Virus record (IMG/VR): IMGVR_UViG_3300044957_000763
Coordinates: 124,001 to 188,000 of that record
DNA length: 64,000 bases
Direction: 5' to 3' (one strand)
Below are positions 20,131 through 56,254 of this stretch, in pieces. The position numbers were made by a program, and so were the translations under genes. Numbering within the stretch: position 1 is the stretch's first letter; each line of letters starts with the position of its first letter. The notes beneath the pieces are model-generated. The model was not told the origin of the DNA. It made no database searches and worked only from the letters and a program-made list of their open reading frames with translations.

Positions 20131-20485
20131 GGGCGTGTAAGGGAGTCGATTGGCACTCTAACTTATCGTTGCAAGGCGTGGATGTATCCTTGGCCACGTA
20201 AAAATGGATGCAAAAAGTAAATGCGAATAACAACTTCGCACTCGCGGTCTAAGACATCGTGACATGAAGCGGATGTGAGTCAGTAACGTCCGTGGATTGC
20301 AGCCAAATCTGAATAGGCTCAAAGCACTTCTGTTCGTAGTGCCAGAGATGAAAAACAATCGAACTGGTGATGGAACGGGTTGGCCTTTTCCAAAGTCTGT
20401 CACGAGAAAAGAATAGAGGAGAACCTTGTGGTAGTGATAGGGTAAGGTGAACAACAACGCGGTTCAATTCCGCGCACGTCCACCA
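20131..20485 (+). ncRNA. ssrA: tmRNA; resume peptide (A)ANNNFALAV*
   Basis: Acceptor GGGCGTG/CACGTCC-ACCA with G3:U70; T-arm GCGG-TTCAATT-CCGC; tag ORF 20223-20252. Confidence 0.93.
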
Positions 20486-30247: not shown

Positions 30248-30574
30248 ATGAATACGGTAACTGATTCTAGTTTTGGTAAAGAGGTCGAAGAAGCCTCAGA
30301 TGAACAAGTTGTCATAGTCAACTTTTCTGCTTCTTGGTGTGGTCCGTGCAAGGCAATGAGGCCGCAGGTTGAGGCTATTGAGGCAAAATCCACTGGTGCA
30401 AAATTCGTATATTGTGACATTGATGACGCACCTATGCAAACAGAAAAGTTTGGTGTTTTAGGTGTGCCAACATATGTCGTGATGCGCAACCGCAAAGAAC
30501 ACGCAAGATTCGCAGGCTCAGGCCCACAAGTGTTAAGTGGCATTCAAGAATCAATTGAAAAGTTTTCGGTTTAG
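30248..30574 (+). CDS. trxA: Thioredoxin
   Basis: FSASWCGPCK active site; cis-Pro GVPT. Confidence 0.93.
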   Translation: MNTVTDSSFGKEVEEASDEQVVIVNFSASWCGPCKAMRPQVEAIEAKSTGAKFVYCDIDDAPMQTEKFGVLGVPTYVVMRNRKEHARFAGSGPQVLSGIQESIEKFSV

Positions 30575-30575
30575 T

Positions 30576-30648
30576 ACCGGCGGTTCTGGGCCAGAGACTT
30601 CAAGCTCATATCTTGAAGGAATGGGTTCGATTCCCTTCGCCGGTACCA
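30576..30648 (+). tRNA. tRNA-Met(CAT)
   Basis: ACCGGCG/CGCCGGT-ACCA; TCAAG-CTCATAT-CTTGA. Confidence 0.75.
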
Positions 30649-33688: not shown

Positions 33689-33727
33689 GCATGAATTATA
33701 GCACGTGTGCTATAATAACCAGTAATC

Positions 33728-33803
33728 GCTCCAGTAGCTCAACGACAGAGCGGAGGTCTCTAACACCTCGACTGAGTGGGTTCAACTCCCACCTGGAGCA
33801 CCA
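33728..33803 (+). tRNA. Amber-suppressor-type tRNA (CTA)
   Basis: GCTCCAG/CTGGAGC-ACCA; GAGGT-CT-CTA-AC-ACCTC; own TGCTATAAT promoter. Confidence 0.88.
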
Positions 33804-33808
33804 AATTT

Positions 33809-34288
33809 ATGCAAGTATTCGTACCATCAACTGATATGCGCGAAAGCGTTAGAGTGTTAGATACTCTAAGATTGCGAAAGCAATTGTTAGAGTGCGTGGG
33901 GATTTTGTCGATTCTTCACAATCTTCCAAAGGCAGACGGCTCTCCGCGCAAAGGGCATCTCAATCATCCAGCAGTGCTTCAATGGAAATACTGGCCTGGT
34001 TGCTTGGCGACGTATGCCATGATGTGCGTGGAAGAACTTGAATCTCGTGGATTTTTCTCGGAAAAGATGCGTACTTCTGCCGAGGCATTTCAGACCGATG
34101 ACAACAAACCAGTTTGGTGGGGTGATGAGCAAGTTCATTCAACACATCGAAGTCGACTGCTACAAAAAGACCCTGTACACTACGGTCAATTCAATTGGGA
34201 AGAGATGAATCAAGAACCGCAGTCATATTGGTGGGCTATTCCATCGAGTAAATCTGAGTACAACTTGGAGCGCAGAGGTAAATCATGA
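33809..34288 (+). CDS. Pyrimidine-dimer glycosylase/endonuclease V-like (MSMEG_6728 family)
   Basis: MQVF...LDTLRLRKQLLE...HLNHPAVLQW...HSTHRSRLLQKDP. Confidence 0.8.
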   Translation: MQVFVPSTDMRESVRVLDTLRLRKQLLECVGILSILHNLPKADGSPRKGHLNHPAVLQWKYWPGCLATYAMMCVEELESRGFFSEKMRTSAEAFQTDDNKPVWWGDEQVHSTHRSRLLQKDPVHYGQFNWEEMNQEPQSYWWAIPSSKSEYNLERRGKS

Positions 34289-34761
34289 GGTTCATTTTCT
34301 TGGATATTGATGGTTGTCTGAATGACCGCACAATGATGTCAAATGGATTTTGTGGTATTGATGACGATAAAGTTGCGTTATTGAATCAAATTCTCTCGAA
34401 TCACGAGGATGTGTTCTTGGTGATTTCTTCTGCATGGCGATATATGTGCATAGCTAAAGATATGACTCTAAGAGGGTTTGAGGAAATGTTGTTGACCCAC
34501 GGTGTAGACTGCTACGGTCGTGTCCATGGTATTACATCTCCAGATGAGAAATATTGGCCAGACATTCCAACAAGTGACGATTATGCAGACCTTACTGTTC
34601 GCGCTCGTCAAATTGAAGAATATGTACAACAACATAACCCACAATCATTTGTGGTATTTGATGATTTGGATTTACCAGTTGACAATATAGTCAAGACTGA
34701 TGGTCAAATTGGCTTAGAGCAACACCACATATACTCAGCTCTGAACATTTTATTTCAGTAG
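34285..34761 (+). CDS. HAD-superfamily (Swiss Army Knife RNA repair-like) protein
   Basis: FLDIDGCLN, ISSAWR, VVFDD. Confidence 0.8.
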   Translation: MRFIFLDIDGCLNDRTMMSNGFCGIDDDKVALLNQILSNHEDVFLVISSAWRYMCIAKDMTLRGFEEMLLTHGVDCYGRVHGITSPDEKYWPDIPTSDDYADLTVRARQIEEYVQQHNPQSFVVFDDLDLPVDNIVKTDGQIGLEQHHIYSALNILFQ

Positions 34762-34772
34762 TTGAAGCCGTA

Positions 34773-34802
34773 TTGACAAACATTGGATTTGAGGATATAA
34801 TA
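34773..34802 (+). promoter_or_regulatory. sigma70 promoter
   Basis: TTGACA...TATAAT directly before a near-leaderless ATG. Confidence 0.7.
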
Positions 34803-35296
34803 TGAACATGCAAACCATTACCCTTTCTCGCGCACTTCAGGTCAAGAATCGCCTGGCTGAAAAAATCGCAGTTGCACAGAAGTTGGTGCAAGATTACAAC
34901 AGTAGCGTTGTAATCCCTGGACAGGCACCGGAGTTCAATGTGGCAGAGGTTTACAAACTCTATACCGAGCTACAGTATCGAATGGTCGATTTGAAAGACC
35001 GCATCAGCGAGGCAAATCGTCCTGTTCAGGCGACTATTTTCGAGCTTGCTGAGTTGAAAGGCCGCGTGCAGATGCTCAAGGGCTTGAACACGCGTAAAGG
35101 AAAGGAGTTTGCTAACTCGTATTCCATGTTTGATGACAGTGGTGAACCCAAGATGGTTGAGTACGTGGCAGTACTCGATAAGCAGTTCACTGCCGAAGAA
35201 ATTCGCGTTCTGCAGAATGAAATCGACAGTCGACAGGCTGACCTAGACCGCCACAATCATCAAACCATAATCGAATTTGATTTCGATTGGATGTAA
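34802..35296 (+). CDS. DIP1984/DUF6847-like coiled-coil protein
   Basis: ITLSRALQVKNRL...LKDRISEAN...LAELK...LQNEID..Q..LD..N pattern (recalled family resemblance). Confidence 0.6.
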   Translation: MNMQTITLSRALQVKNRLAEKIAVAQKLVQDYNSSVVIPGQAPEFNVAEVYKLYTELQYRMVDLKDRISEANRPVQATIFELAELKGRVQMLKGLNTRKGKEFANSYSMFDDSGEPKMVEYVAVLDKQFTAEEIRVLQNEIDSRQADLDRHNHQTIIEFDFDWM

Positions 35297-35317
35297 CGAT
35301 TTCGGCTTCGGTCGAAA

Positions 35318-35547
35318 CTAGGGGTGTGTAAGTGAGATGCGAGCCAGGTGCACAATCAGTGTATGTCTGGGTTCACTTCGGTGAATAGAAAACAAGTAAC
35401 CACTTGAAATGGTGACTATTATGGCAAACTTGTTCCTGACTAGGACTTTGAATGTCAAGATGCAAGGTTCAATTTAGTCAAAATACAAGGCGCAAAACGC
35501 AAGTCTTAAGAATCAACATTCACTCGGTCTTACAAACCACCCCTTAG
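35318..35547 (+). ncRNA. Structured RNA with 7-nt-periodic CAA loop
   Basis: GGGGTG-TGTAAG/CTTACA-CACCCC closing helix, UUCG hairpin, AACAAGT/ACTTGTT helix, GAATGT/ACATTC closing a repeat loop. Confidence 0.7.
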
Positions 35548-35592
35548 TATTTTGTTGAAGGTCGATTTTACACTTGTGTCGAACTGTTAATT

Positions 35593-36327
35593 ATGAGTTC
35601 GAAATACACACATCGACACGATGAAATTGTTCACTTGTGTAAAAACGCATTTACATTTTCAGAAGTCGAGCAACAGCTTGGTACATCAACACCAAACACC
35701 TCGCTTCGGAGATATATTAAGTTTCATAGCATACCAATGCCAAATTATTGCAGAGTTCGCGACGTTGATGATAATTTAGTAAAATATTATCAACCTATAC
35801 GAATTGAAGATTTGATAAATGGCATACGATTGTCAACGCATGCTGTAAAGAAATTTCTTTTTAAGAACGGTATCAAATCTCAAGAGTGTGAGATTTGCGG
35901 TTGGTGTGAACGACGTGCATCAAATGGAAAAATTCCAGTACACTTACATCACATTAACGGGAACCCATTTGATTGGACGATTGAAAATTTGCAGATTTTG
36001 TGCCCTAATCATCATGCACTCACTGATAATTTTGGTTCTCTGAATACAGGAAAAGGTTACATATTTGCAAATCGCCCAGCTACAACCAGGGCCCGCTTAG
36101 AGCACGAAACTAGCAATGCTTGTTTGTATTGCGCTTCTGCTTGTTCTTATAAGTCTAAATTTTGTTCTAGAGAGTGTCTATATATGAGTCAGCAAAAATG
36201 CATTAGACCAACTAAGGAACAATTAAAAGATGAGATAGCTAATAGCAACTGGATGGCTATTGGTCGCAAATATGGAGTGTCAGACAATGCTGTAAGAAAA
36301 TGGGCCAAGAAATATGGCATAATATAA
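35593..36327 (+). CDS. HNH endonuclease with C-terminal HTH
   Basis: CEICG...LHHINGN..D...NLQILCPNHH; AIGRKYGVSDNAVRKW. Confidence 0.88.
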   Translation: MSSKYTHRHDEIVHLCKNAFTFSEVEQQLGTSTPNTSLRRYIKFHSIPMPNYCRVRDVDDNLVKYYQPIRIEDLINGIRLSTHAVKKFLFKNGIKSQECEICGWCERRASNGKIPVHLHHINGNPFDWTIENLQILCPNHHALTDNFGSLNTGKGYIFANRPATTRARLEHETSNACLYCASACSYKSKFCSRECLYMSQQKCIRPTKEQLKDEIANSNWMAIGRKYGVSDNAVRKWAKKYGII

Positions 36328-36329
36328 TT

Positions 36330-36411
36330 GCCCCGTGGTTTGACGCTTGAGGCTTGAGCGATTGGTCCCTAAAACCAACAACAAAGGGTTCAACTCCCTC
36401 TCGGGGCGCCA
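36330..36411 (+). tRNA. Second, non-canonical tRNA with CTA anticodon
   Basis: TTGGT-CC-CTA-AA-ACCAA (C33 instead of U33); 6-bp acceptor; 14-nt D-loop; GCCA end. Confidence 0.55.
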
Positions 36412-38577: not shown

Positions 38578-41500
38578 ATGTGGTACAGAACTATTGTAGC
38601 TGCAAGAAACGGCGTATATGTTTCAGAATTGAATTTACCAATCAATGAAACACTGCACGCAATTCTTGAGGATTTGAGGTCACAAGGATTTAAGGCCTTG
38701 GTGGTCGGCGGTGCTGTGCGAGACGCGGTGATGGGTGTGGTGCCCAAAGACATTGATGTTGAGGTTTATGGAGCAGACTATGACACTTTACACACAACAC
38801 TCACCAAATACGGTCGCGCCGACGTAGTTGGTAAAAGTTTTGGTGTGTTGAAGTTGCGCACGCCCGATGGTCAAGATTATGACTTTAGCGTTCCTCGGCG
38901 TGACAGTAAAACAGGAGATGGGCATACAGGGTTTAAAATTACTGTAGACCATACAATGACACCAGAGCAAGCGGCAGCCCGCCGCGATTTCACCATGAAT
39001 TGTTTTTCTGGAGAAACGAAAATATTGACCAAATCAGGACCGAAATCATTAATGGAATTATGTGGTCAACAATGTGAGGTGTTAGACGGAAACGGTGAGT
39101 GGACACACGCAGATGTTAGGTCGTTTGGTGTTCAAAAATTGTTAAAATTGACTGTTACCAGAAATAGAATTGTCAAAACGATTTATGCAACTCCAAATCA
39201 CAGATGGTTTATCAAGAATAAACACACATATGTTTTTGACCGCGAAAGAACGACTGAGAATTTGCGGTGCGGTCACATGCTTCCGTCTGTGTATCCAATT
39301 ATTCAATCTACACAATTAGACAATGAGTCTATTTGTAGGGGGTTTGTATTTGGTGACGGCAACATTGTTGTTTTTGACAGCGGGAATGCGGTGAGCATTG
39401 CTAATTTTTGCGGTGAAAAAGACTCACATTTATTACCTTTATTTGAAAAACTGGACATGGGTCGACCCCCTCATGATATCCCATCGGGCAAGCGCATCTC
39501 TTCTCTTCCGCCAAATTGGAAGTTAGAAACTCCAGAATTTTCTGAATCATATGAATATCTACTTGGGTGGTTGTCTGGTTATTTTGCCGCTGATGGTTGT
39601 GTAGACTCTAAGGGATGTCCTGTGTTGAGTTCTTGCAATAGGGAAAATCTTGAATATGTAGAGCAACTTTGCAGATGTGTTGGTATCGGTACATATCAAA
39701 TCAGTCAATGTAAAATTGGTTCTGGGTACAATTCAAAAAGTGAATGTTGGTCTTTGGGCTTTGTGCGCAAAACTTTGTTTTCTGATTTTTTTATTATTCC
39801 AGAGCACAGAAAAAGATTTAACTCTGCAACCAATAGTCGGAATCGAACTGCATGGAAGGTTGTTAGTGTTGATGATTCAGATAGGATTGAAGAGGTTTAT
39901 TGTGCTGTAGTGCCGACCACTCATACATTTTGCCTAGATGGCAATTTGTTGACATCAAATTGTCTTGCGTATGACCCGTTGACGTCTGAGATACATGACT
40001 ACTATGGTGGAATTGAGGACTTGGAGAACGGTGTGTTGCGCGCCACCACAGAGGCATTTAAGGAAGACCCTTTGCGTGTATTGCGCGGCATGCAATTCGC
40101 TGCCAGATACGGTATGCGTCTAGACCCTGACACTGCAAAGATGTGCAGGGAAATAGTCGATGCGCATGACGAGTTGGCAACTGAGCGCATTGCAGAAGAA
40201 TGGATGAAACTTGCCATTAAGGGAAAACAACCAGGAACCGCACTCGAATACTTGGCAGACACTGGATGGCTAAAGCATTATCCAGAGCTTGAGGCCATGT
40301 TCGATGTGCCCCAAGACCCAGAATGGCACCCGGAAGGCTGGGAGCACTTCGATGCACCAGAACACAAAAGAAACCTATATACCAAAGAAGACCAAAATGT
40401 ATCTCACTGGCAAGACGTTATTGGTTTTCGGGGCGACGCACCAAGCGGTAGTAAAATGGTCTCGACACCTTATAAGTCCACAAATCCAGAACGCCAGCAT
40501 GAGAACAGCCCAGAACCACACATTTATGTCACTATGGATGTTCCTATTGACAGCTATTGGAGATATGTGTACGAACAAGACAGAATTGATGCCAAACCTA
40601 TAGCCAACCTTGCTGTTAGACACTTAATGTCTCAATATGGTGGTGCCGAACTTAATGGCAAGACCCACTATCGTATGATTGGTTCATTGAAAGCCAGTCC
40701 AGCAGTGTATTGTCATGCCGAACGACAAGGTGACCATGTTGAATTGACCGTTGGGCTTCATAGTGAGTTGTCTAAGGAGTTGTTAGACCGTGGATGCCCA
40801 CTTCATGTTTATGTGAAAATGGGCGATGTAGCCACGCATACTGCACACGTGATGGATGCAGCCGCTGCAGTTGCAGAGCGAGACGGACTGATTGGTGATG
40901 ACAGGGCAACATTAGTACTTGCCGCTATGGTGCATGATATTGCCAAGCCACAGACCACAGAAATCCAGCAACGCGCCGGCAGGGGTATGTCTGTAACTTC
41001 GATTGGTCACGAAAAGGCCGGAGAACCAATTGCTGTAGACCTACTCAAAAGAATGGGCATTAAGAAGTCAATCAGGGATAAGGTTGGTCCAATGGTGGCA
41101 CGTCATTTGGCGCATGTTACCACGACCCCAACTAAGTCTAATGTGCGCAAGCTGGCTCGTGATATCGCACCAGCCAGCATTGAAGAACTTGCCAAGTTGA
41201 TTGAGGCCGACCATTCTGGTAGGCCACCATTGCCACAAGAGTTACCTCGTCAAGCCCAGGATATGTTGGATATTGCTAGAAAAGACGGTGTAGCCAACGG
41301 CAAGCCCGCACCAATTGTGCAAGGCAAGCATGTTCTGCCATATTACGGTGGCGCGTCAGGGAAACATATTGGTGAAGCGGTACAGGAAGCATATCGTGCA
41401 TACTTAAATGGTGCCTATGACAACTTTGAAGGTGGACAACAGTGGTTGAGCAATTATTTACAGTCTCGAGCCTCTATGCTTAGAGGTTCAGATGTTATAG

Positions 41501-41646
41501 CACTTGGTGTTAAACCCGGTCCAGTGATTGGTCAAATACTCAACGAGGCATGGCAAATGCAGATTGTGGGCACGTTCACGAGTCGTGAGGATGCTCTTGC
41601 TTGGCTGTCGAATCGAGTGAATTCTGACGCCACGTTAACGCAGTAG
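38578..41646 (+). CDS. cca: CCA-adding tRNA nucleotidyltransferase with HD domain, intein and extra insertion
   Basis: VGGAVRD, DIDVE, RRDFTMN, EDPLRVLR, ERIAEEW, PQDPEWHPEG, VHDIAK. Confidence 0.9.
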   Translation: MWYRTIVAARNGVYVSELNLPINETLHAILEDLRSQGFKALVVGGAVRDAVMGVVPKDIDVEVYGADYDTLHTTLTKYGRADVVGKSFGVLKLRTPDGQDYDFSVPRRDSKTGDGHTGFKITVDHTMTPEQAAARRDFTMNCFSGETKILTKSGPKSLMELCGQQCEVLDGNGEWTHADVRSFGVQKLLKLTVTRNRIVKTIYATPNHRWFIKNKHTYVFDRERTTENLRCGHMLPSVYPIIQSTQLDNESICRGFVFGDGNIVVFDSGNAVSIANFCGEKDSHLLPLFEKLDMGRPPHDIPSGKRISSLPPNWKLETPEFSESYEYLLGWLSGYFAADGCVDSKGCPVLSSCNRENLEYVEQLCRCVGIGTYQISQCKIGSGYNSKSECWSLGFVRKTLFSDFFIIPEHRKRFNSATNSRNRTAWKVVSVDDSDRIEEVYCAVVPTTHTFCLDGNLLTSNCLAYDPLTSEIHDYYGGIEDLENGVLRATTEAFKEDPLRVLRGMQFAARYGMRLDPDTAKMCREIVDAHDELATERIAEEWMKLAIKGKQPGTALEYLADTGWLKHYPELEAMFDVPQDPEWHPEGWEHFDAPEHKRNLYTKEDQNVSHWQDVIGFRGDAPSGSKMVSTPYKSTNPERQHENSPEPHIYVTMDVPIDSYWRYVYEQDRIDAKPIANLAVRHLMSQYGGAELNGKTHYRMIGSLKASPAVYCHAERQGDHVELTVGLHSELSKELLDRGCPLHVYVKMGDVATHTAHVMDAAAAVAERDGLIGDDRATLVLAAMVHDIAKPQTTEIQQRAGRGMSVTSIGHEKAGEPIAVDLLKRMGIKKSIRDKVGPMVARHLAHVTTTPTKSNVRKLARDIAPASIEELAKLIEADHSGRPPLPQELPRQAQDMLDIARKDGVANGKPAPIVQGKHVLPYYGGASGKHIGEAVQEAYRAYLNGAYDNFEGGQQWLSNYLQSRASMLRGSDVIALGVKPGPVIGQILNEAWQMQIVGTFTSREDALAWLSNRVNSDATLTQ
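39001..39960 (+). mobile_element. Intein (320 aa) with LAGLIDADG homing endonuclease
   Basis: Begins CFSGET, block B TPNHRW, GFVFGDG and GYFAADG, ends VYCAVV...LLTSN; +1 residue Cys. Confidence 0.92.
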
Positions 41647-45007: not shown

Positions 45008-46267
45008 ATGAACTATCTTAGAACTGTTTTTGCATCCGATATGCCCTTTGCGGCAGATAGAGAACTTGGAAACCAAGTCCTTTGTGGGCGAATTACCAAC
45101 GTGCGTAGGCAAGGTGGTGTTTGTTTCATTACAATCCAAGACCACACTGGCAGAACTCAACTATTCGGCCAGCGCAATGTACTTGGTGACCGATATACCG
45201 ACTTCTATCAAATGGGTGTTGGTGACATGGTGTATGCGCTTGGAAACATTGCACGCACTGTAGCCGGCGAACCAAGTCTGTTTGTATCTGACTTTGGAAT
45301 TGGTGGTGTTGCATATGACCGACCACCTCTAGGTCAGGTTACTCCAGACGGTGTTCGGATGAATGCTCTTGAGGACATTGAAGAGTGTCGAAGAAATCGA
45401 CATTTGGATATGATGTCGAATAGCGACACAATGTCGCGATTCGTGTCGCGTTCGCAGTTTATTAGCGACTTGCGTGCCTATCTTCGCGACATGGCCTATT
45501 TAGAAGTCGAGACACCAATTTTGCAAGAACAGGCCACTGGTGCCACTGCGTCTACGTTCAATACGTATCACAACGAAATGAACCAGGATATGCAGTTGCG
45601 AATCGCTCTTGAGATTCACCTCAAGCTATGCATTATGGGTGGATTAGACAGGGTATTTGAACTTGGTCGGGTTTTCAGAAACGAAGGTGTTAGTTCGCGT
45701 CACAATCCAGAGTTTACATTGTTAGAGATGTACGCTGCGTGGACTGGACTTGAGCACATGATGTCAGAAACTGAGCATATCGTCCGAATGGCATATGCTT
45801 CATTTGGCCGTGAATTGCCAGAATTCAGAGTTGCTACAATGGGCTCTCTGGTTGGTGATTCAGAAAATTTGATTGAAGATTTTGACAATCATATTGCACA
45901 CACGTTAGTTGAGCCGACGTTTGTTACAAATCATCCACTAAGCGATTCGCCTTTTGCTCAAGAGGACATTGCAATGCCTGGTACGGCTATGAGGTTTGAA
46001 CTCTATATCAATGGTGTAGAAGTTGCGAATGCCTATCAGGAAATCAATGATGCCGAAGAACAGGCTTCTCGTTTGAGATTGGATGATGGAACATTGGCAC
46101 CAATGGATGCGTATTTTGTCAACGCAATGCGAAATGGCATGCCGCCGACAAGCGGCCTCGGGATTGGTATTGACAGGCTAGTTATGCTTGCATCCAATTC
46201 TGCATCAATTCGTGACATCTTGTTGTTCCCGTCGATGAGAAATACAGGAGGGATTCCTATGTTGTAG
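45008..46267 (+). CDS. lysS: Compact class II lysyl-tRNA synthetase
   Basis: N-terminal OB fold; YLEVETP, LRIALEIHLK, motif 2 FRNEG..RHNPEFT.LEMY, motif 3 GMPPTSGLGIGIDRLVM. Confidence 0.9.
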   Translation: MNYLRTVFASDMPFAADRELGNQVLCGRITNVRRQGGVCFITIQDHTGRTQLFGQRNVLGDRYTDFYQMGVGDMVYALGNIARTVAGEPSLFVSDFGIGGVAYDRPPLGQVTPDGVRMNALEDIEECRRNRHLDMMSNSDTMSRFVSRSQFISDLRAYLRDMAYLEVETPILQEQATGATASTFNTYHNEMNQDMQLRIALEIHLKLCIMGGLDRVFELGRVFRNEGVSSRHNPEFTLLEMYAAWTGLEHMMSETEHIVRMAYASFGRELPEFRVATMGSLVGDSENLIEDFDNHIAHTLVEPTFVTNHPLSDSPFAQEDIAMPGTAMRFELYINGVEVANAYQEINDAEEQASRLRLDDGTLAPMDAYFVNAMRNGMPPTSGLGIGIDRLVMLASNSASIRDILLFPSMRNTGGIPML

Positions 46268-55367: not shown

Positions 55368-55575
55368 TGACGCGAGCCAATTAGTTGGCATGTCTGTTGG
55401 CAACGGTAAGTCCGAACTTACAGAAGCCCAACTTCAAAGTATCGCAACCGGACTTGGATATCGCACTGCGCAAATCAGAGACACCTTTTCGATGTATGAT
55501 TGTATGTACGATACAAGCCGGCTGCAAATTCATGTAGACGAACAGAAAAAAATTACATCAGTCCGCGTCGGCTAA
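55345..55575 (+). CDS. Peptidase inhibitor I78-like small protein
   Basis: LVG...IR...DY/CMY...RLQIHVDE...ITSVRVG. Confidence 0.5.
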   Translation: MKTKVQINDASQLVGMSVGNGKSELTEAQLQSIATGLGYRTAQIRDTFSMYDCMYDTSRLQIHVDEQKKITSVRVG

Positions 55576-56254
55576 ATCCGATTTCGCCACCGAGGTATCG
55601 TGCCAATGACACTTTCTGTCCTGTGATTTCGCACTTGACTATGTTGTCTTGGCAACGGATTGTACGCACCTTGTCGCCGCGCATACCGCTACCGATTTGT
55701 TCTTTTCTATCTCGAGCACGTTCATTTGTACTCTTTTTTGTTTGATAGTCGAGAACCTTGGAGTACAGTAGTTCTAAAGCAAGCGCACGGTTTTGATGTT
55801 GGCTTCGCTCTGTGTCACATCTAATTTCCATACCCGTAGGCAGGTGCTTTGCTATGACACAGGTTTCTACCTTGTTCTTTCGTTGGCCGCCTGGCCCGGA
55901 ACCTTTGGTAAACCTGAGTTCTATGTCCTTTTCGTTGACAACAGCGTTGTTGACAGCAATTGGAAGAACTGCCACAGTGATTGAAGAAGAATGTACTCGC
56001 CCACGTTTTTCATTCGGCGGAATTCTCTGCCATCTGTGGCCACCGGGTTCTTTGGCAAACAGTTCTGCCGCATAATCGCCTTTGATTATCAGCGCACAGA
56101 ACCCATCACGTTCATCAATAAACTCTAGTCAGAGCTTATTGGCTTTGCAGGCACGTTCGTAGATTCCGGCCTGTTCTTTGACGAGCATTTTGGCGTCGTC
56201 ACCGCCTTCGCCAGAGCGAATTTCAACAAGGATTGAATTATTGTGATGTTTCAT
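55553..56254 (-). CDS. Minimal class I peptide chain release factor with in-frame UGA at codon 42
   Basis: AGAGG SD, MKHH...VEIRSGEGGDDA...KANKL*LEFIDERDG...GGHRWQRIPPNEKRGRVHSSSITVAV...GPGGQ; all one frame, 233 codons. Confidence 0.85.

What the first reader, a model, noticed from the sequence alone, without database searches (positions are those of the whole stretch)
33728..36411. Two amber-anticodon tRNAs in a genome that still uses TAG as a stop
Seen: a canonical cloverleaf with CUA at 33728 under its own promoter, and a non-canonical one at 36330 (C33, long D-loop, G73). At least 12 well-supported genes here end in TAG (groEL, trxA, dCMP deaminase, cca, lysS and others), and I found no in-frame TAG in recognisable genes. 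Known: TAG-recoded phages carry CUA tRNAs plus an RF2-type factor. Inference: this may be a pre-recoding state or conditional readthrough, or recoding may be limited to genes outside the window. The odd release factor would fit such a system.
Basis: partly seen in the sequence, partly recalled or inferred. Interest (0 to 1): 0.62.

Follow-up and report, generated by a model that had tools for sequence, protein, structure and literature searches.

The report
Two conserved amber-suppressor tRNAs, huge phage
A 479-kb lake-water phage that ends about a fifth of its own genes with TAG still carries two conserved tRNA genes that read TAG, one normal in shape and one oddly built, so it probably lets ribosomes read through that stop on purpose: a habit already seen in giant phages and still unexplained.

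Summary
Both tRNAs are real. The first (33728-33803) is a canonical tRNA (Rfam 56 bits). The second (36330-36411) is missed by ARAGORN defaults and by Rfam's tRNA model. However, seven orthologs keep its cloverleaf through compensatory changes and keep CUA invariant. It has an 8-bp acceptor stem, a 4-bp T stem and a 5-6-nt connector. C33 is specific to this genome and two relatives; four of the seven orthologs have U33.

The window lies in a complete 478,840-bp virus genome that uses the standard code. Coding density is 90.3% under code 11 and 90.6% with TAG read through. TAG ends 17-20% of well-supported ORFs across the whole genome. Among orthologs TAG swaps freely with TAA and TGA, and I found no gene with an in-frame TAG.

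Relatives down to 57% protein identity carry both CUA tRNAs and also use TAG stops. This is therefore a stable state, not a step towards recoding.

The release factor is RF1-like, so it should read UAG. That is the opposite of the RF2 found in TAG-recoded phages.

The most likely function is real, partial UAG suppression. Its target and the inserted amino acid are unknown. Precedent exists: Xanthomonas phage XacN1 has two CUA tRNAs with TAG stops.

New here are the 8/4 architecture, the clade-wide conservation, the linkage to a structured RNA operon, and a dedicated HNH homing-endonuclease subfamily.

The parts
33708..33716 (+). extended -10 promoter element (TG-c-TATAAT) 11 nt upstream of tRNA 1
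   Evidence: Read from the sequence. The same element is conserved in L004 and L006. The consensus scan did not list it because the -35 is poor.
33728..33803 (+). tRNA 1: canonical 7/5 tRNA, anticodon CUA, loop CUCUAAC, A73, CCA encoded
   Evidence: ARAGORN. Rfam tRNA 56.2 bits. Cloverleaf fold with z = -2.9. Orthologs sit at the same place in L004, L006/7, L010, L011, L013 and L016.
33809..34288 (+). pyrimidine-dimer DNA glycosylase gene. It starts 5 nt after the tRNA's CCA, and its only Shine-Dalgarno-like GGAG lies in the tRNA's 3' acceptor strand.
   Evidence: Pfam Pyr_excise, E 1.8e-12. The junction is conserved in relatives.
34285..34761 (+). HAD_SAK_2 (RNA-repair type HAD) gene, ending in TAG
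   Evidence: Pfam, E 2.9e-16. Orthologs end in TGA or TAA.
34773..34801 (+). perfect sigma-70 promoter TTGACA-17-TATAAT abutting the p164 start; probable promoter of the p164 - ncRNA - (HNH) - tRNA 2 unit
   Evidence: 12 of 12 consensus matches. Conserved in L004, L006, L010 and L016.
34802..35296 (+). p164, a 164-aa protein always found upstream of the structured RNA; weak DIP1984-family resemblance
   Evidence: NCBIfam DIP1984_fam, E 2e-4, 21.5 bits, below the cut-off of 70. Thirteen homologs found. Synteny shown.
35297..35549 (+). conserved structured non-coding RNA of about 250 nt. It has a closing long-range helix and UUCG hairpins; its 3' half carries about ten CAA motifs spaced 7-8 nt apart.
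   Evidence: Fold z = -3.5, -90.5 kcal/mol. Conserved in 9 relatives. A wastewater relative matches with 8 differences in 187 nt, against about 15% divergence in the flanking genes. No Rfam family matches.
35593..36327 (+). free-standing HNH homing-endonuclease gene, inserted between the ncRNA and tRNA 2
   Evidence: Pfam HNH_3, weak. The gene is absent from relatives: a contig skips 35550-36261, and L004, L013, L016 and L036 lack it. A 23-codon remnant remains in L010.
36330..36411 (+). tRNA 2: non-canonical tRNA, anticodon CUA, loop CCCUAAA (C33). It has an 8-bp acceptor stem (with a U7.U66 mismatch), a 4-bp T stem, a 6-nt connector, a 4-bp D stem with a 9-nt loop, G73 and an encoded CCA.
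   Evidence: It is the only strong hit of its own covariance model in the whole genome (106.5 bits).
38578..41646 (+). CCA-adding enzyme with a LAGLIDADG intein and an HD domain (context: tRNA 3'-end repair)
   Evidence: Pfam PolyA_pol, LAGLIDADG_3, HD. Relatives lacking the intein are about 700 aa.
45008..46267 (+). class II lysyl-tRNA synthetase; the only class IIb synthetase in the genome and a candidate charging enzyme
   Evidence: Pfam tRNA-synt_2 plus OB anticodon-binding domain. NCBIfam lysS 361-382 bits. It is the single PF00152 hit in the genome.
55553..56254 (-). RF1-like release factor without domain 1. It has PPN in place of PxT, keeps GGQ, and has one conserved in-frame TGA (56129-56131) in the context CUC-UGA-CUA-G.
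   Evidence: The TGA and its context are conserved in L051, L052, L053 and L056.
20131..20485 (+). phage tmRNA, tag ANNNFALAV (context: rescue of ribosomes that run past stop codons)
   Evidence: ARAGORN. Rfam tmRNA 98.6 bits.

Best explanation
Both genes encode working amber-suppressor tRNAs that a clade of standard-code huge phages from lakes and wastewater keeps on purpose.

Shown:
- tRNA 1 sits behind its own extended -10 promoter, as the leader of a DNA/RNA-repair operon.
- tRNA 2 is the last element of a unit driven by a perfect sigma-70 promoter: p164, a structured RNA, tRNA 2.
- Both encode CCA.
- In both, the stems co-vary while C34-U35-A36 never changes.
- Both have 12 stacked base pairs in the acceptor/T branch, arranged 7/5 or 8/4.

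Inferred:
- Host RNase P and 3' nucleases release the tRNAs.
- A synthetase that reads U35 charges them. LysRS (host or phage) or GlnRS are the likeliest; different discriminators (A73 and G73) suggest two different enzymes.
- EF-Tu delivers them to the ribosome, where they compete with RF1 at UAG.
- A fraction of ribosomes therefore reads through UAG on host and phage messages, adding short tails until the next stop.
- The phage tmRNA, PTH2 and its own RF1-like factor limit or tune the damage.

The genome itself is not recoded. The benefit is unknown. The options I consider are controlled readthrough as a regulatory or host-disturbing device, or insurance against amber mutations.
For: - The anticodon CUA is invariant in 8 tRNA-1 orthologs of two architectures and in 7 distinct tRNA-2 orthologs.
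- The stems change by compensatory substitution. In a hand-set register all four D-stem pairs change both sides. On the model-fitted alignment the acceptor pairs 6:67 and 7:66 and two anticodon-stem pairs do, giving a covariation score of 0.236 against 0.104 in shuffles, 0 of 500.
- The loops follow YUCUAAA/C, with A37 always present.
- At locus 1 some relatives replaced the 7/5 tRNA by an 8/4 tRNA plus an HNH gene. The replacement still reads CUA.
- By contrast, the tRNA-like insert in this phage's GOLLD RNA changes its anticodon between relatives (UCA here, a UUG-type loop in L057). Anticodon constancy is therefore not automatic for embedded tRNA-like elements.
- 8/4 tRNAs work in bacterial translation (PMC5389517).
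- Promoters are conserved.
- The neighbourhood is rich in tRNA and translation genes: CCA enzyme, LysRS, PTH2, tmRNA and a release factor.
Against: - There is no expression, processing or charging evidence. The RNA-library contigs that cover the locus belong to a relative and cannot prove transcription.
- No target was found. There is no in-frame TAG, no conserved open extension behind TAG stops, and no excess of back-up stops or TAG avoidance.
- Suppression would mistranslate the ends of about 19% of the phage's own genes.
- The phage also encodes an RF1-like factor, which should oppose suppression.
- tRNA 2 has C33 in this genome, a U.U mismatch in the acceptor stem and an unusual connector. 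Standard detectors reject it.
- The amino-acid identity could not be inferred.
Confidence: 0.55

Rival explanations
1. The tRNAs are passengers of a homing-endonuclease system. They persist because a dedicated HNH endonuclease subfamily homes next to, or into, CUA-tRNA genes and drags them between phages. Their effect on translation is small or neutral.
For: Every close HNH homolog I could inspect lies 2-70 nt from a CUA tRNA. These are the window and L006-9 (tRNA 2); L010, L011 and L016 (8/4 tRNA 1); and two unrelated contigs picked blind, L058 and L059. HNH presence or absence is polymorphic at both loci. The wider HNH family sits in phage tRNA arrays in 79 of 80 loci. In L059 the tRNA-plus-HNH cassette sits between two halves of a Gln-like tRNA.
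Against: L004 and L013 carry both tRNAs with no HNH gene within the fetched loci, and the tRNAs stay intact with co-varying stems. Purifying selection on the anticodon itself is not explained by hitch-hiking. In the wider family only 1 of about 480 neighbouring tRNAs is CUA. The link therefore reflects the target choice of one subfamily, not a reason for CUA to exist.
Confidence: 0.15
2. These are tRNA-shaped RNA elements with a role outside decoding. They could be RNase P/Z punctuation that releases the flanking mRNA and the structured RNA, or decoys for a synthetase, a release factor or a host anticodon nuclease.
For: tRNA 1 abuts the next gene (5 nt) and contains that gene's only SD-like sequence. 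tRNA 2 always directly follows the about 250-nt structured RNA. The same phage embeds a tRNA-like element in its GOLLD RNA. tRNA 2 departs from the canonical shape and has C33 here.
Against: A punctuation signal does not need a fixed anticodon. Here CUA is invariant across two loci, two architectures and at least 43% protein divergence, whereas the GOLLD-embedded element lets its anticodon drift. The encoded CCA, the 12-bp acceptor/T branch, the T-loop and the GG in the D-loop are all kept.
Confidence: 0.15
3. One reading: the phage is on its way to TAG recoding, or it recodes TAG in some genes outside the window.
For: Suppressor tRNAs in standard-code relatives of recoded phages have been proposed as a first step to recoding (bioRxiv 10.1101/2021.08.26.457843).
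Against: Coding density is the same under both readings across all 24 20-kb bins. TAG is 17-20% of stops, so it is not depleted, and GC is 44.5%. All TAG-separated same-frame ORF pairs are separate genes. Relatives at 57-91% identity have the same two tRNAs and TAG stops that swap with TAA and TGA. The factor encoded is RF1-like, not RF2.
Confidence: 0.05
4. The tRNAs are pyrrolysine or selenocysteine tRNAs, as the ARAGORN label 'tRNA-Pyl' and the weak Rfam tRNA-Sec hit would suggest.
For: ARAGORN labels any CUA tRNA as Pyl. tRNA 2 gives a 22-bit tRNA-Sec match because of its long acceptor stem.
Against: There is no PylS in the genome; the only match is the LysRS, at 22 bits against a cut-off of 178. 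tRNA 1 has a 5-bp anticodon stem and a normal D-loop, and tRNA 2 also has a 5-bp anticodon stem. tRNA 2 has no long variable arm, its anticodon is CUA rather than UCA, and it scores far below the Sec gathering threshold of 47.
Confidence: 0.01

Closest known systems
CUA suppressor tRNAs of the standard-code jumbo phage XacN1 (PMC5852040); also the UCA suppressor of Atu_ph07 (PMC6102473)
   Same: A cultured jumbo phage with a large tRNA set has two CUA tRNA genes in each terminal repeat. TAG is still used as a stop (18 genes), and in-silico readthrough found no target. That is the same paradox as here.
   Different: Here the pair is shown to be conserved across a clade with covariation. One member, and in some relatives both, has an 8/4 architecture. 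The genes are tied to a structured-RNA operon and to a specific HNH subfamily. The phage also carries an RF1-like factor whose gene has a conserved in-frame UGA.
Code-switch modules of TAG- or TGA-recoded phages such as Lak, crAss-like, Jade and Agate (bioRxiv 10.1101/2021.08.26.457843)
   Same: A phage-encoded suppressor tRNA together with a release factor and a synthetase, located near translation-related genes.
   Different: This genome is not recoded. The factor is RF1-like, not the RF2 that accompanies TAG recoding. The synthetase is LysRS rather than a Gln or Trp enzyme. TAG is not depleted.
(8/4) non-canonical tRNAs and allo-tRNAs (Mukai et al., PMC5389517)
   Same: A 12-bp acceptor/T branch split 8/4. 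Such tRNAs are found in bacteria and phages and are shown to function in E. coli translation, including as engineered amber suppressors.
   Different: The described natural 8/4 species are Ser (long variable arm) or His tRNAs, or allo-tRNAs with Sec-like D-arms. tRNA 2 has a short variable region, a natural CUA anticodon and a 5-6-nt connector between the acceptor and D stems. That abstract and the passages I read do not mention such a connector.
Free-standing homing endonuclease genes in phage tRNA clusters (T4 SegB; recalled from my own knowledge, not checked here)
   Same: An endonuclease gene lodged between tRNA genes, with presence/absence polymorphism among related phages.
   Different: This is an HNH rather than a GIY-YIG enzyme. 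The close subfamily is found specifically beside CUA tRNAs.
tRNAs linked to large ornate phage RNAs (GOLLD linker tRNAs; bioRxiv 10.1101/2024.12.08.627333)
   Same: A tRNA physically joined to a large structured phage RNA. This phage has such a GOLLD with an embedded tRNA-like element.
   Different: The RNA upstream of tRNA 2 matches no Rfam family. It is only about 250 nt long and is always preceded by a DIP1984-like protein gene.

Membership tests
Bacterial-type elongator tRNA (Rfam RF00005) | Score at or above the family's gathering threshold (29 bits) with a full cloverleaf | tested here: met
   tRNA 1 scores 56.2 bits. The CUA tRNAs of L058 and L059 score 45.9 and 54 bits.
Bacterial-type elongator tRNA (Rfam RF00005) | The same criterion applied to tRNA 2 (36330-36411) | tested here: not met
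   No RF00005 hit at E <= 1; the only hit is tRNA-Sec at 22.1 bits. ARAGORN calls it only at relaxed thresholds. It resembles a tRNA but fails the standard model because of the 8/4 branch and the long connector.
Amber suppressor tRNA | Anticodon CUA in a 7-nt loop, conserved among orthologs | tested here: met
   CUA is invariant in 8 and 7 orthologs respectively. Loops follow YUCUAAA/C or CCCUAAA.
Amber suppressor tRNA | The tRNA is aminoacylated and inserts an amino acid at UAG | not testable with these tools
   This needs tRNA sequencing, a reporter assay or proteomics.
(8/4) non-canonical tRNAs (PMC5389517) | 8-bp acceptor stem plus 4-bp T stem, 12 bp in all | tested here: met
   G8-C65 is invariant and the T stem AGGG/CCCU is invariant in tRNA 2. 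The L010-type tRNA 1 folds with 8-9 acceptor pairs; I read a 4-bp T stem from its sequence.
allo-tRNA subgroup of 8/4 and 9/3 tRNAs | Long variable arm and a Sec-like long D-stem with a tetraloop | tested here: not met
   The variable region is 5-6 nt. The D stem is 4 bp with a 9-nt loop in the covarying register.
tRNA-Pyl | A cognate PylRS in the genome, a 6-bp anticodon stem, a 3-nt variable loop and a tiny D-loop | tested here: not met
   No PylS above cut-off. The anticodon stems are 5 bp and the variable regions 5-6 nt.
tRNA-Sec (Rfam RF01852) | Gathering score of 47 bits, UCA anticodon, long variable arm | tested here: not met
   22.1 bits, a CUA anticodon and no long variable arm.
TAG-recoded (code 15) phage with a code-switch module | In-frame TAG in genes; higher coding density when TAG is read as sense | tested here: not met
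   90.3% against 90.6%. No split genes across TAG.
TAG-recoded (code 15) phage with a code-switch module | An RF2-type release factor (SPF motif) accompanies the CUA tRNA | tested here: not met
   The factor is RF1-like: prfA 148.8 bits against prfB 102.8, with PPN aligned to PxT.
Free-standing HNH homing endonuclease of phage tRNA arrays | HNH motif, presence/absence polymorphism between close relatives, position between tRNA genes | tested here: met
   HNH_3 hit and an invariant HH...N...H pattern. The gene is absent from L004, L013 and L016 and from a wastewater relative. 79 of 80 family loci hold tRNAs. Cleavage activity was not tested.

The most novel reading that the evidence does not exclude
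A clade of standard-code huge phages runs a dedicated stop-codon control module without recoding its genome. The module has two differently charged amber suppressors: a canonical A73 tRNA, and an 8/4 G73 tRNA released from a novel protein-plus-structured-RNA operon. It also has an RF1-like factor (PxN motif, no domain 1) whose own synthesis requires readthrough of a conserved UGA-CUA-G site. Together with the phage tmRNA and PTH2, this module would set UAG and UGA termination efficiency during infection, as a regulatory device or a weapon against the host. The suppressor genes would spread between phages by a homing endonuclease specialised on them.
Probability: 0.2. Interest if true: 0.8.

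Novelty: new variant of a known kind. Interest (0 to 1): 0.58.

Why it matters
Suppressor tRNAs in phages are usually read as tools, or first steps, of stop-codon recoding. This case shows a pair of amber suppressors kept under selection across a diverged clade that goes on using TAG as an ordinary stop. Suppression itself may therefore be the selected trait, not recoding.

It also gives three further things:
- A natural 8/4 amber suppressor with an unusual connector. This could interest genetic-code-expansion work, where orthogonal amber suppressors are sought.
- A concrete example of tRNA genes that standard detectors miss.
- A testable link between a homing-endonuclease subfamily and suppressor tRNA genes, which could explain how such tRNAs move among phages.

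Tried and rejected
- Near-identity DNA and protein searches of the GenBank phage collection found nothing. Exact-pattern scans of IMG/VR for either tRNA also found nothing.
- Single-protein related-loci runs with the HAD gene and p164 found nothing. Relatives came only through the search for homologous proteins plus look-up of encoding contigs.
- Isotype assignment by nearest-neighbour comparison with phage tRNAs gave 'Arg' with a reference set that was biased by my own pattern search. With an unbiased set of 457 phage tRNAs it gave no consistent isotype. I reject it as uninformative.
I repeated it by reference only.
- RNAalifold found no convincing consensus structure for the about 250-nt RNA beyond a few helices. 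Rfam has no match for it.
- I considered a group I intron for the ncRNA-plus-HNH arrangement. There is no Rfam intron hit, and ARAGORN's intron mode finds no split tRNA.
- I considered the opal-suppressor reading of the UCA tRNA at genome position 233368. It lies inside a GOLLD RNA, lacks CCA, has two acceptor mismatches, and its anticodon is not conserved in a relative. I do not count it as a suppressor.
- I looked for back-up stops, TAG avoidance by genome region and conserved C-terminal extensions. There was no signal.
- Read laying was given 2,901 letters. No genetic code other than table 11 was named in any tool.


Full report
**What the window is.** The window is bases 124001-188000 of a single 478,840-bp contig. 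It is an IMG/VR virus record with direct terminal repeats, estimated complete, with 44.5% G+C. ARAGORN finds 62 tRNAs and a tmRNA in the genome. The DNA is found in several lake-water metagenomes, and parts of relatives occur in wastewater and activated sludge. No near relative exists in the GenBank phage collection.

**Observation: tRNA 1.** The gene at 33728-33803 is a canonical 76-nt tRNA with anticodon CUA, loop CUCUAAC, A73 and an encoded CCA. Support comes from ARAGORN, Rfam tRNA at 56.2 bits and a clean cloverleaf fold with z = -2.9. An extended -10 element (TG-c-TATAAT) lies 11 nt upstream and is conserved in relatives. The next gene, a pyrimidine-dimer glycosylase, starts 5 nt after the CCA.

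**Observation: tRNA 2.** ARAGORN defaults and Rfam's tRNA model both reject the element at 36330-36411. It gives only a sub-threshold tRNA-Sec hit (22.1 bits), and its fold energy is unremarkable (z = -0.8). On the sequence alone it would be doubtful. Comparative data settle the matter.

- Through homologs of the neighbouring 164-aa protein I fetched syntenic loci from relatives at 91% to 53% protein identity. A metagenome pattern scan added two more loci.
- Seven distinct orthologs of tRNA 2 exist.
- In a hand-set structural register every helix pairs in every sequence, except a U7.U66 mismatch in five of them. Compensatory changes occur at acceptor pairs 6:67 and 7:66, at all four D-stem pairs (CGCU/AGCG, UCUC/GAGA, CCUC/GAGG) and at two anticodon-stem pairs.
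- On an Infernal-fitted alignment 93.2% of cells pair. The covariation score is 0.236 against 0.104 in shuffles (0 of 500 reach it), and the score collapses when partners are slid.
- C34-U35-A36 is invariant. Position 33 is C in this genome, L010 and L016, and U in L004, L006, L013 and L036.
- The architecture is an 8-bp acceptor stem (G8-C65 invariant), a 4-bp T stem, a 5-6-nt connector, a 4-bp D stem with a 9-nt GG-containing loop, a 5-6-nt variable region, G73 and an encoded CCA.
- A covariance model of the family finds exactly one strong member in the genome (106.5 bits).
- ARAGORN does call the orthologs as tRNA(cta) once its threshold is relaxed.

**TAG is an ordinary stop here.**

- Greedy ORF coverage is 90.3% under table 11, 90.6% if TAG is open and 89.6% if TGA is open. 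No 20-kb bin behaves differently.
- After removing ORFs that overlap RNA genes, TAG ends 72 of 382 ORFs of at least 100 aa and 23 of 133 of at least 300 aa, in every 40-kb bin.
- Only 7 same-frame coding pairs are separated by a TAG, against 38 for TAA and 12 for TGA. Two of the seven lie in tRNA arrays. Each of the other five has a start codon 0-3 codons after the stop, so they are neighbouring genes.
- Distances to the next in-frame stop and the base after the stop do not set TAG apart.
- Among orthologous genes of the relatives, TAG swaps with TAA and TGA. The sequence after TAG is neither open nor conserved.

**Conservation of the pair.**

- tRNA 1 is present at the same place in L004, L006/7, L010, L011, L013 and L016. 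It is absent only from L012.
- tRNA 1 comes in two forms. One is the canonical 7/5 form (window, L004, L006, L013). The other is a 74-nt 8/4 form (L010, L011, L016), which shares its anticodon arm with tRNA 2 and is its closest relative by the model (48.9 bits).
- All tRNA-1 forms have A73 and all tRNA-2 forms have G73.
- The two-suppressor arrangement is therefore old and maintained, and the relatives are standard-code as well. This argues against a transitional 'pre-recoding' state. So do the undepleted TAG usage and the mid-range G+C. The published route to recoding starts from low G+C and depleted stop codons.

**Context of tRNA 2.**

- A perfect TTGACA-17-TATAAT promoter abuts the start of the 164-aa gene.
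- That gene gives a weak, full-length DIP1984-family match (E 2e-4, below cut-off).
- The gene is always followed by a structured RNA of about 250 nt. Its fold has z = -3.5 and it matches no Rfam family. Its 3' half carries about ten invariant CAA motifs spaced 7-8 nt apart.
- In most relatives tRNA 2 follows this RNA within 6-30 nt.
- In this genome and in L006-9, a 244-aa HNH endonuclease gene is inserted between them. A wastewater relative's contig joins 35549 to 36262 directly, and L010 keeps only the last 23 codons.

**The HNH link.**

- In L010, L011 and L016 a 50%-identical HNH gene sits 7 nt upstream of the 8/4 tRNA 1.
- I picked two more homologs (44-45% identity) blind from unrelated contigs. 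Each lies 15-70 nt downstream of a bona fide CUA tRNA. Genes on those contigs also end in TAG.
- The wider family (25-47% identity) lies inside phage tRNA arrays in 79 of 80 IMG/VR loci. There only 1 of about 480 neighbouring tRNAs is CUA.
- The family is thus a tRNA-array homing-endonuclease family, and the close subfamily is specialised on CUA tRNA genes. This may explain how suppressor genes move. It does not explain why CUA is kept.

**The release factor.**

- The factor gene (55553-56254, minus strand) is RF1-like: prfA 148.8 bits, prfB 102.8 and prfH 78.
- It lacks domain 1, keeps GGQ and has PPN where RF1 has PxT.
- It carries one in-frame TGA. The stop and its context (CUC or CUG, UGA, CUA, GAR) are conserved in four relatives, including the most distant, with coding conservation on both sides. 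The tripeptide varies as PPN, PQN or PDN.
- An RF1-type factor should terminate at UAG. It therefore does not fit the RF2-plus-CUA pattern of TAG-recoded phages and would rather oppose or tune amber suppression.
- The 'UCA tRNA' of this genome lies in the linker of a GOLLD RNA (112.9 bits, E 4e-30, below gathering). Its anticodon is not conserved in a relative, so I do not count it as an opal suppressor.

**Which amino acid?** The genome encodes no GluRS/GlnRS-class enzyme, no TrpRS/TyrRS-class enzyme and no PylS. It encodes one class IIb enzyme, a LysRS next to three tRNA-Lys genes. From memory of the classical E. coli suppressor work (Normanly, Abelson, Miller and colleagues; not checked here), amber suppressors with U35 are mostly charged by GlnRS or LysRS. 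A73 fits Lys better and G73 fits Gln better. Similarity to phage tRNAs gave no answer. This step is inference only.

**Mechanism and rivals.**

- The invariance of the anticodon, set against co-varying stems, holds at two loci and across two architectures. It survived a gene replacement at locus 1. It contrasts with the drifting anticodon of the GOLLD-embedded element. This is best explained by selection for decoding UAG.
- I therefore favour genuine, partial amber suppression in a non-recoded phage (0.55). The tmRNA, PTH2 and the RF1-like factor would be the accompanying damage-control or tuning parts.
- Against this reading: no target was found, about 19% of the phage's own genes would be affected, tRNA 2 is irregular, and there is no expression or charging evidence.
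- The rivals are a homing-endonuclease passenger (0.15), a non-decoding tRNA-like processing or decoy element (0.15), pre- or hidden recoding (0.05), and Pyl/Sec (0.01).

**Comparison with what is known.**

- The paradox itself is published. XacN1 has two CUA tRNAs in each terminal repeat, uses TAG stops, and no targets were found. Atu_ph07 has a UCA tRNA while UGA is an abundant stop. Suppressor tRNAs also occur in standard-code relatives of recoded phages.
- 8/4 tRNAs are known in phages for Ser and His, and they function in E. coli.
- New here are clade-wide conservation with covariation, a natural 8/4 CUA tRNA with an extended connector that detectors miss, its attachment to a protein-plus-structured-RNA unit, the CUA-specific HNH subfamily, and the co-occurring RF1-like gene with a conserved in-frame UGA.
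- I rate the finding a new variant of a known kind.

Noticed in passing
window 55553-56254 (-), TGA at 56129-56131; relatives L051, L052, L053, L056: RF1-like release-factor gene without domain 1 and with PxN instead of PxT. One in-frame TGA is conserved in position and context (CUC/CUG-UGA-CUA-GAR) in four relatives. This looks like programmed readthrough or an autoregulatory site rather than a pseudogene.
   Followed up: partly
genome 233300-233769 (L003:1801-2269), outside the window; relative L057:1501-1973: GOLLD RNA match (112.9 and 118.1 bits, below the gathering score of 150, E about 1e-30). A tRNA-like element lies in its linker. The element has anticodon UCA and no CCA in this phage, and a UUG-type loop in the relative.
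   Followed up: partly
window 34802-35549 and loci L004, L006, L010, L012, L013, L014, L016, L036: Conserved module of a DIP1984-like 164-aa protein followed by an unclassified structured RNA of about 250 nt, with about ten CAA motifs spaced 7-8 nt apart. The module also occurs without the tRNA (L012, L014/15), so it is a separate unit. It may be an RNA-protein complex.
   Followed up: partly
window 34795-34810: The -10 hexamer of a perfect promoter ends one base before the annotated ATG of p164. Transcription would then start near the second ATG (34808), which suggests a leaderless mRNA.
   Followed up: no
L060-L139 (IMG/VR loci): The HNH family of 35593-36327 lies inside phage tRNA arrays in 79 of 80 loci, nearly always on the same strand as the tRNAs. 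It is a widespread homing-endonuclease family of tRNA arrays.
   Followed up: partly
L059:2317-2354 and L059:3233-3264: The CUA-tRNA plus HNH cassette sits between what look like the 5' half (up to a CUG anticodon) and the 3' half (variable loop, T arm, acceptor) of a Gln-like tRNA. No intron-containing tRNA is called and the 3' anticodon-stem strand is missing.
   Followed up: partly
window 30574-30648 (+); equivalents L004:1810-1882 and L010:535-607: Another non-canonical tRNA-like element that ARAGORN misses in this genome. It has a CAU anticodon, a 7-bp anticodon stem, an acceptor stem of about 9 bp with a 3-bp T stem, and a reduced D arm.
   Followed up: no
window 38578-41646: The CCA-adding enzyme gene is interrupted by a LAGLIDADG intein, giving 1022 aa. 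Relatives without the intein are about 700 aa.
   Followed up: no
L013, L056, L057 = G001:C5, a 1.36-Mb contig of a MAG labelled Armatimonadetes: A related phage region spans at least 97 kb of this contig and holds the p164 locus with both CUA tRNAs, the RF gene with its TGA, and a GOLLD RNA. The MAG's ribosomal protein S8, RF1 and RF2 are on other contigs. The contig could be a prophage, a chimera or a very large phage; this is undecided.
   Followed up: partly
window 33794-33811: The only Shine-Dalgarno-like GGAG for the glycosylase gene lies in the 3' acceptor strand of tRNA 1. tRNA folding or processing should therefore affect translation of the downstream gene. The 5-nt junction is conserved in relatives.
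   Followed up: no
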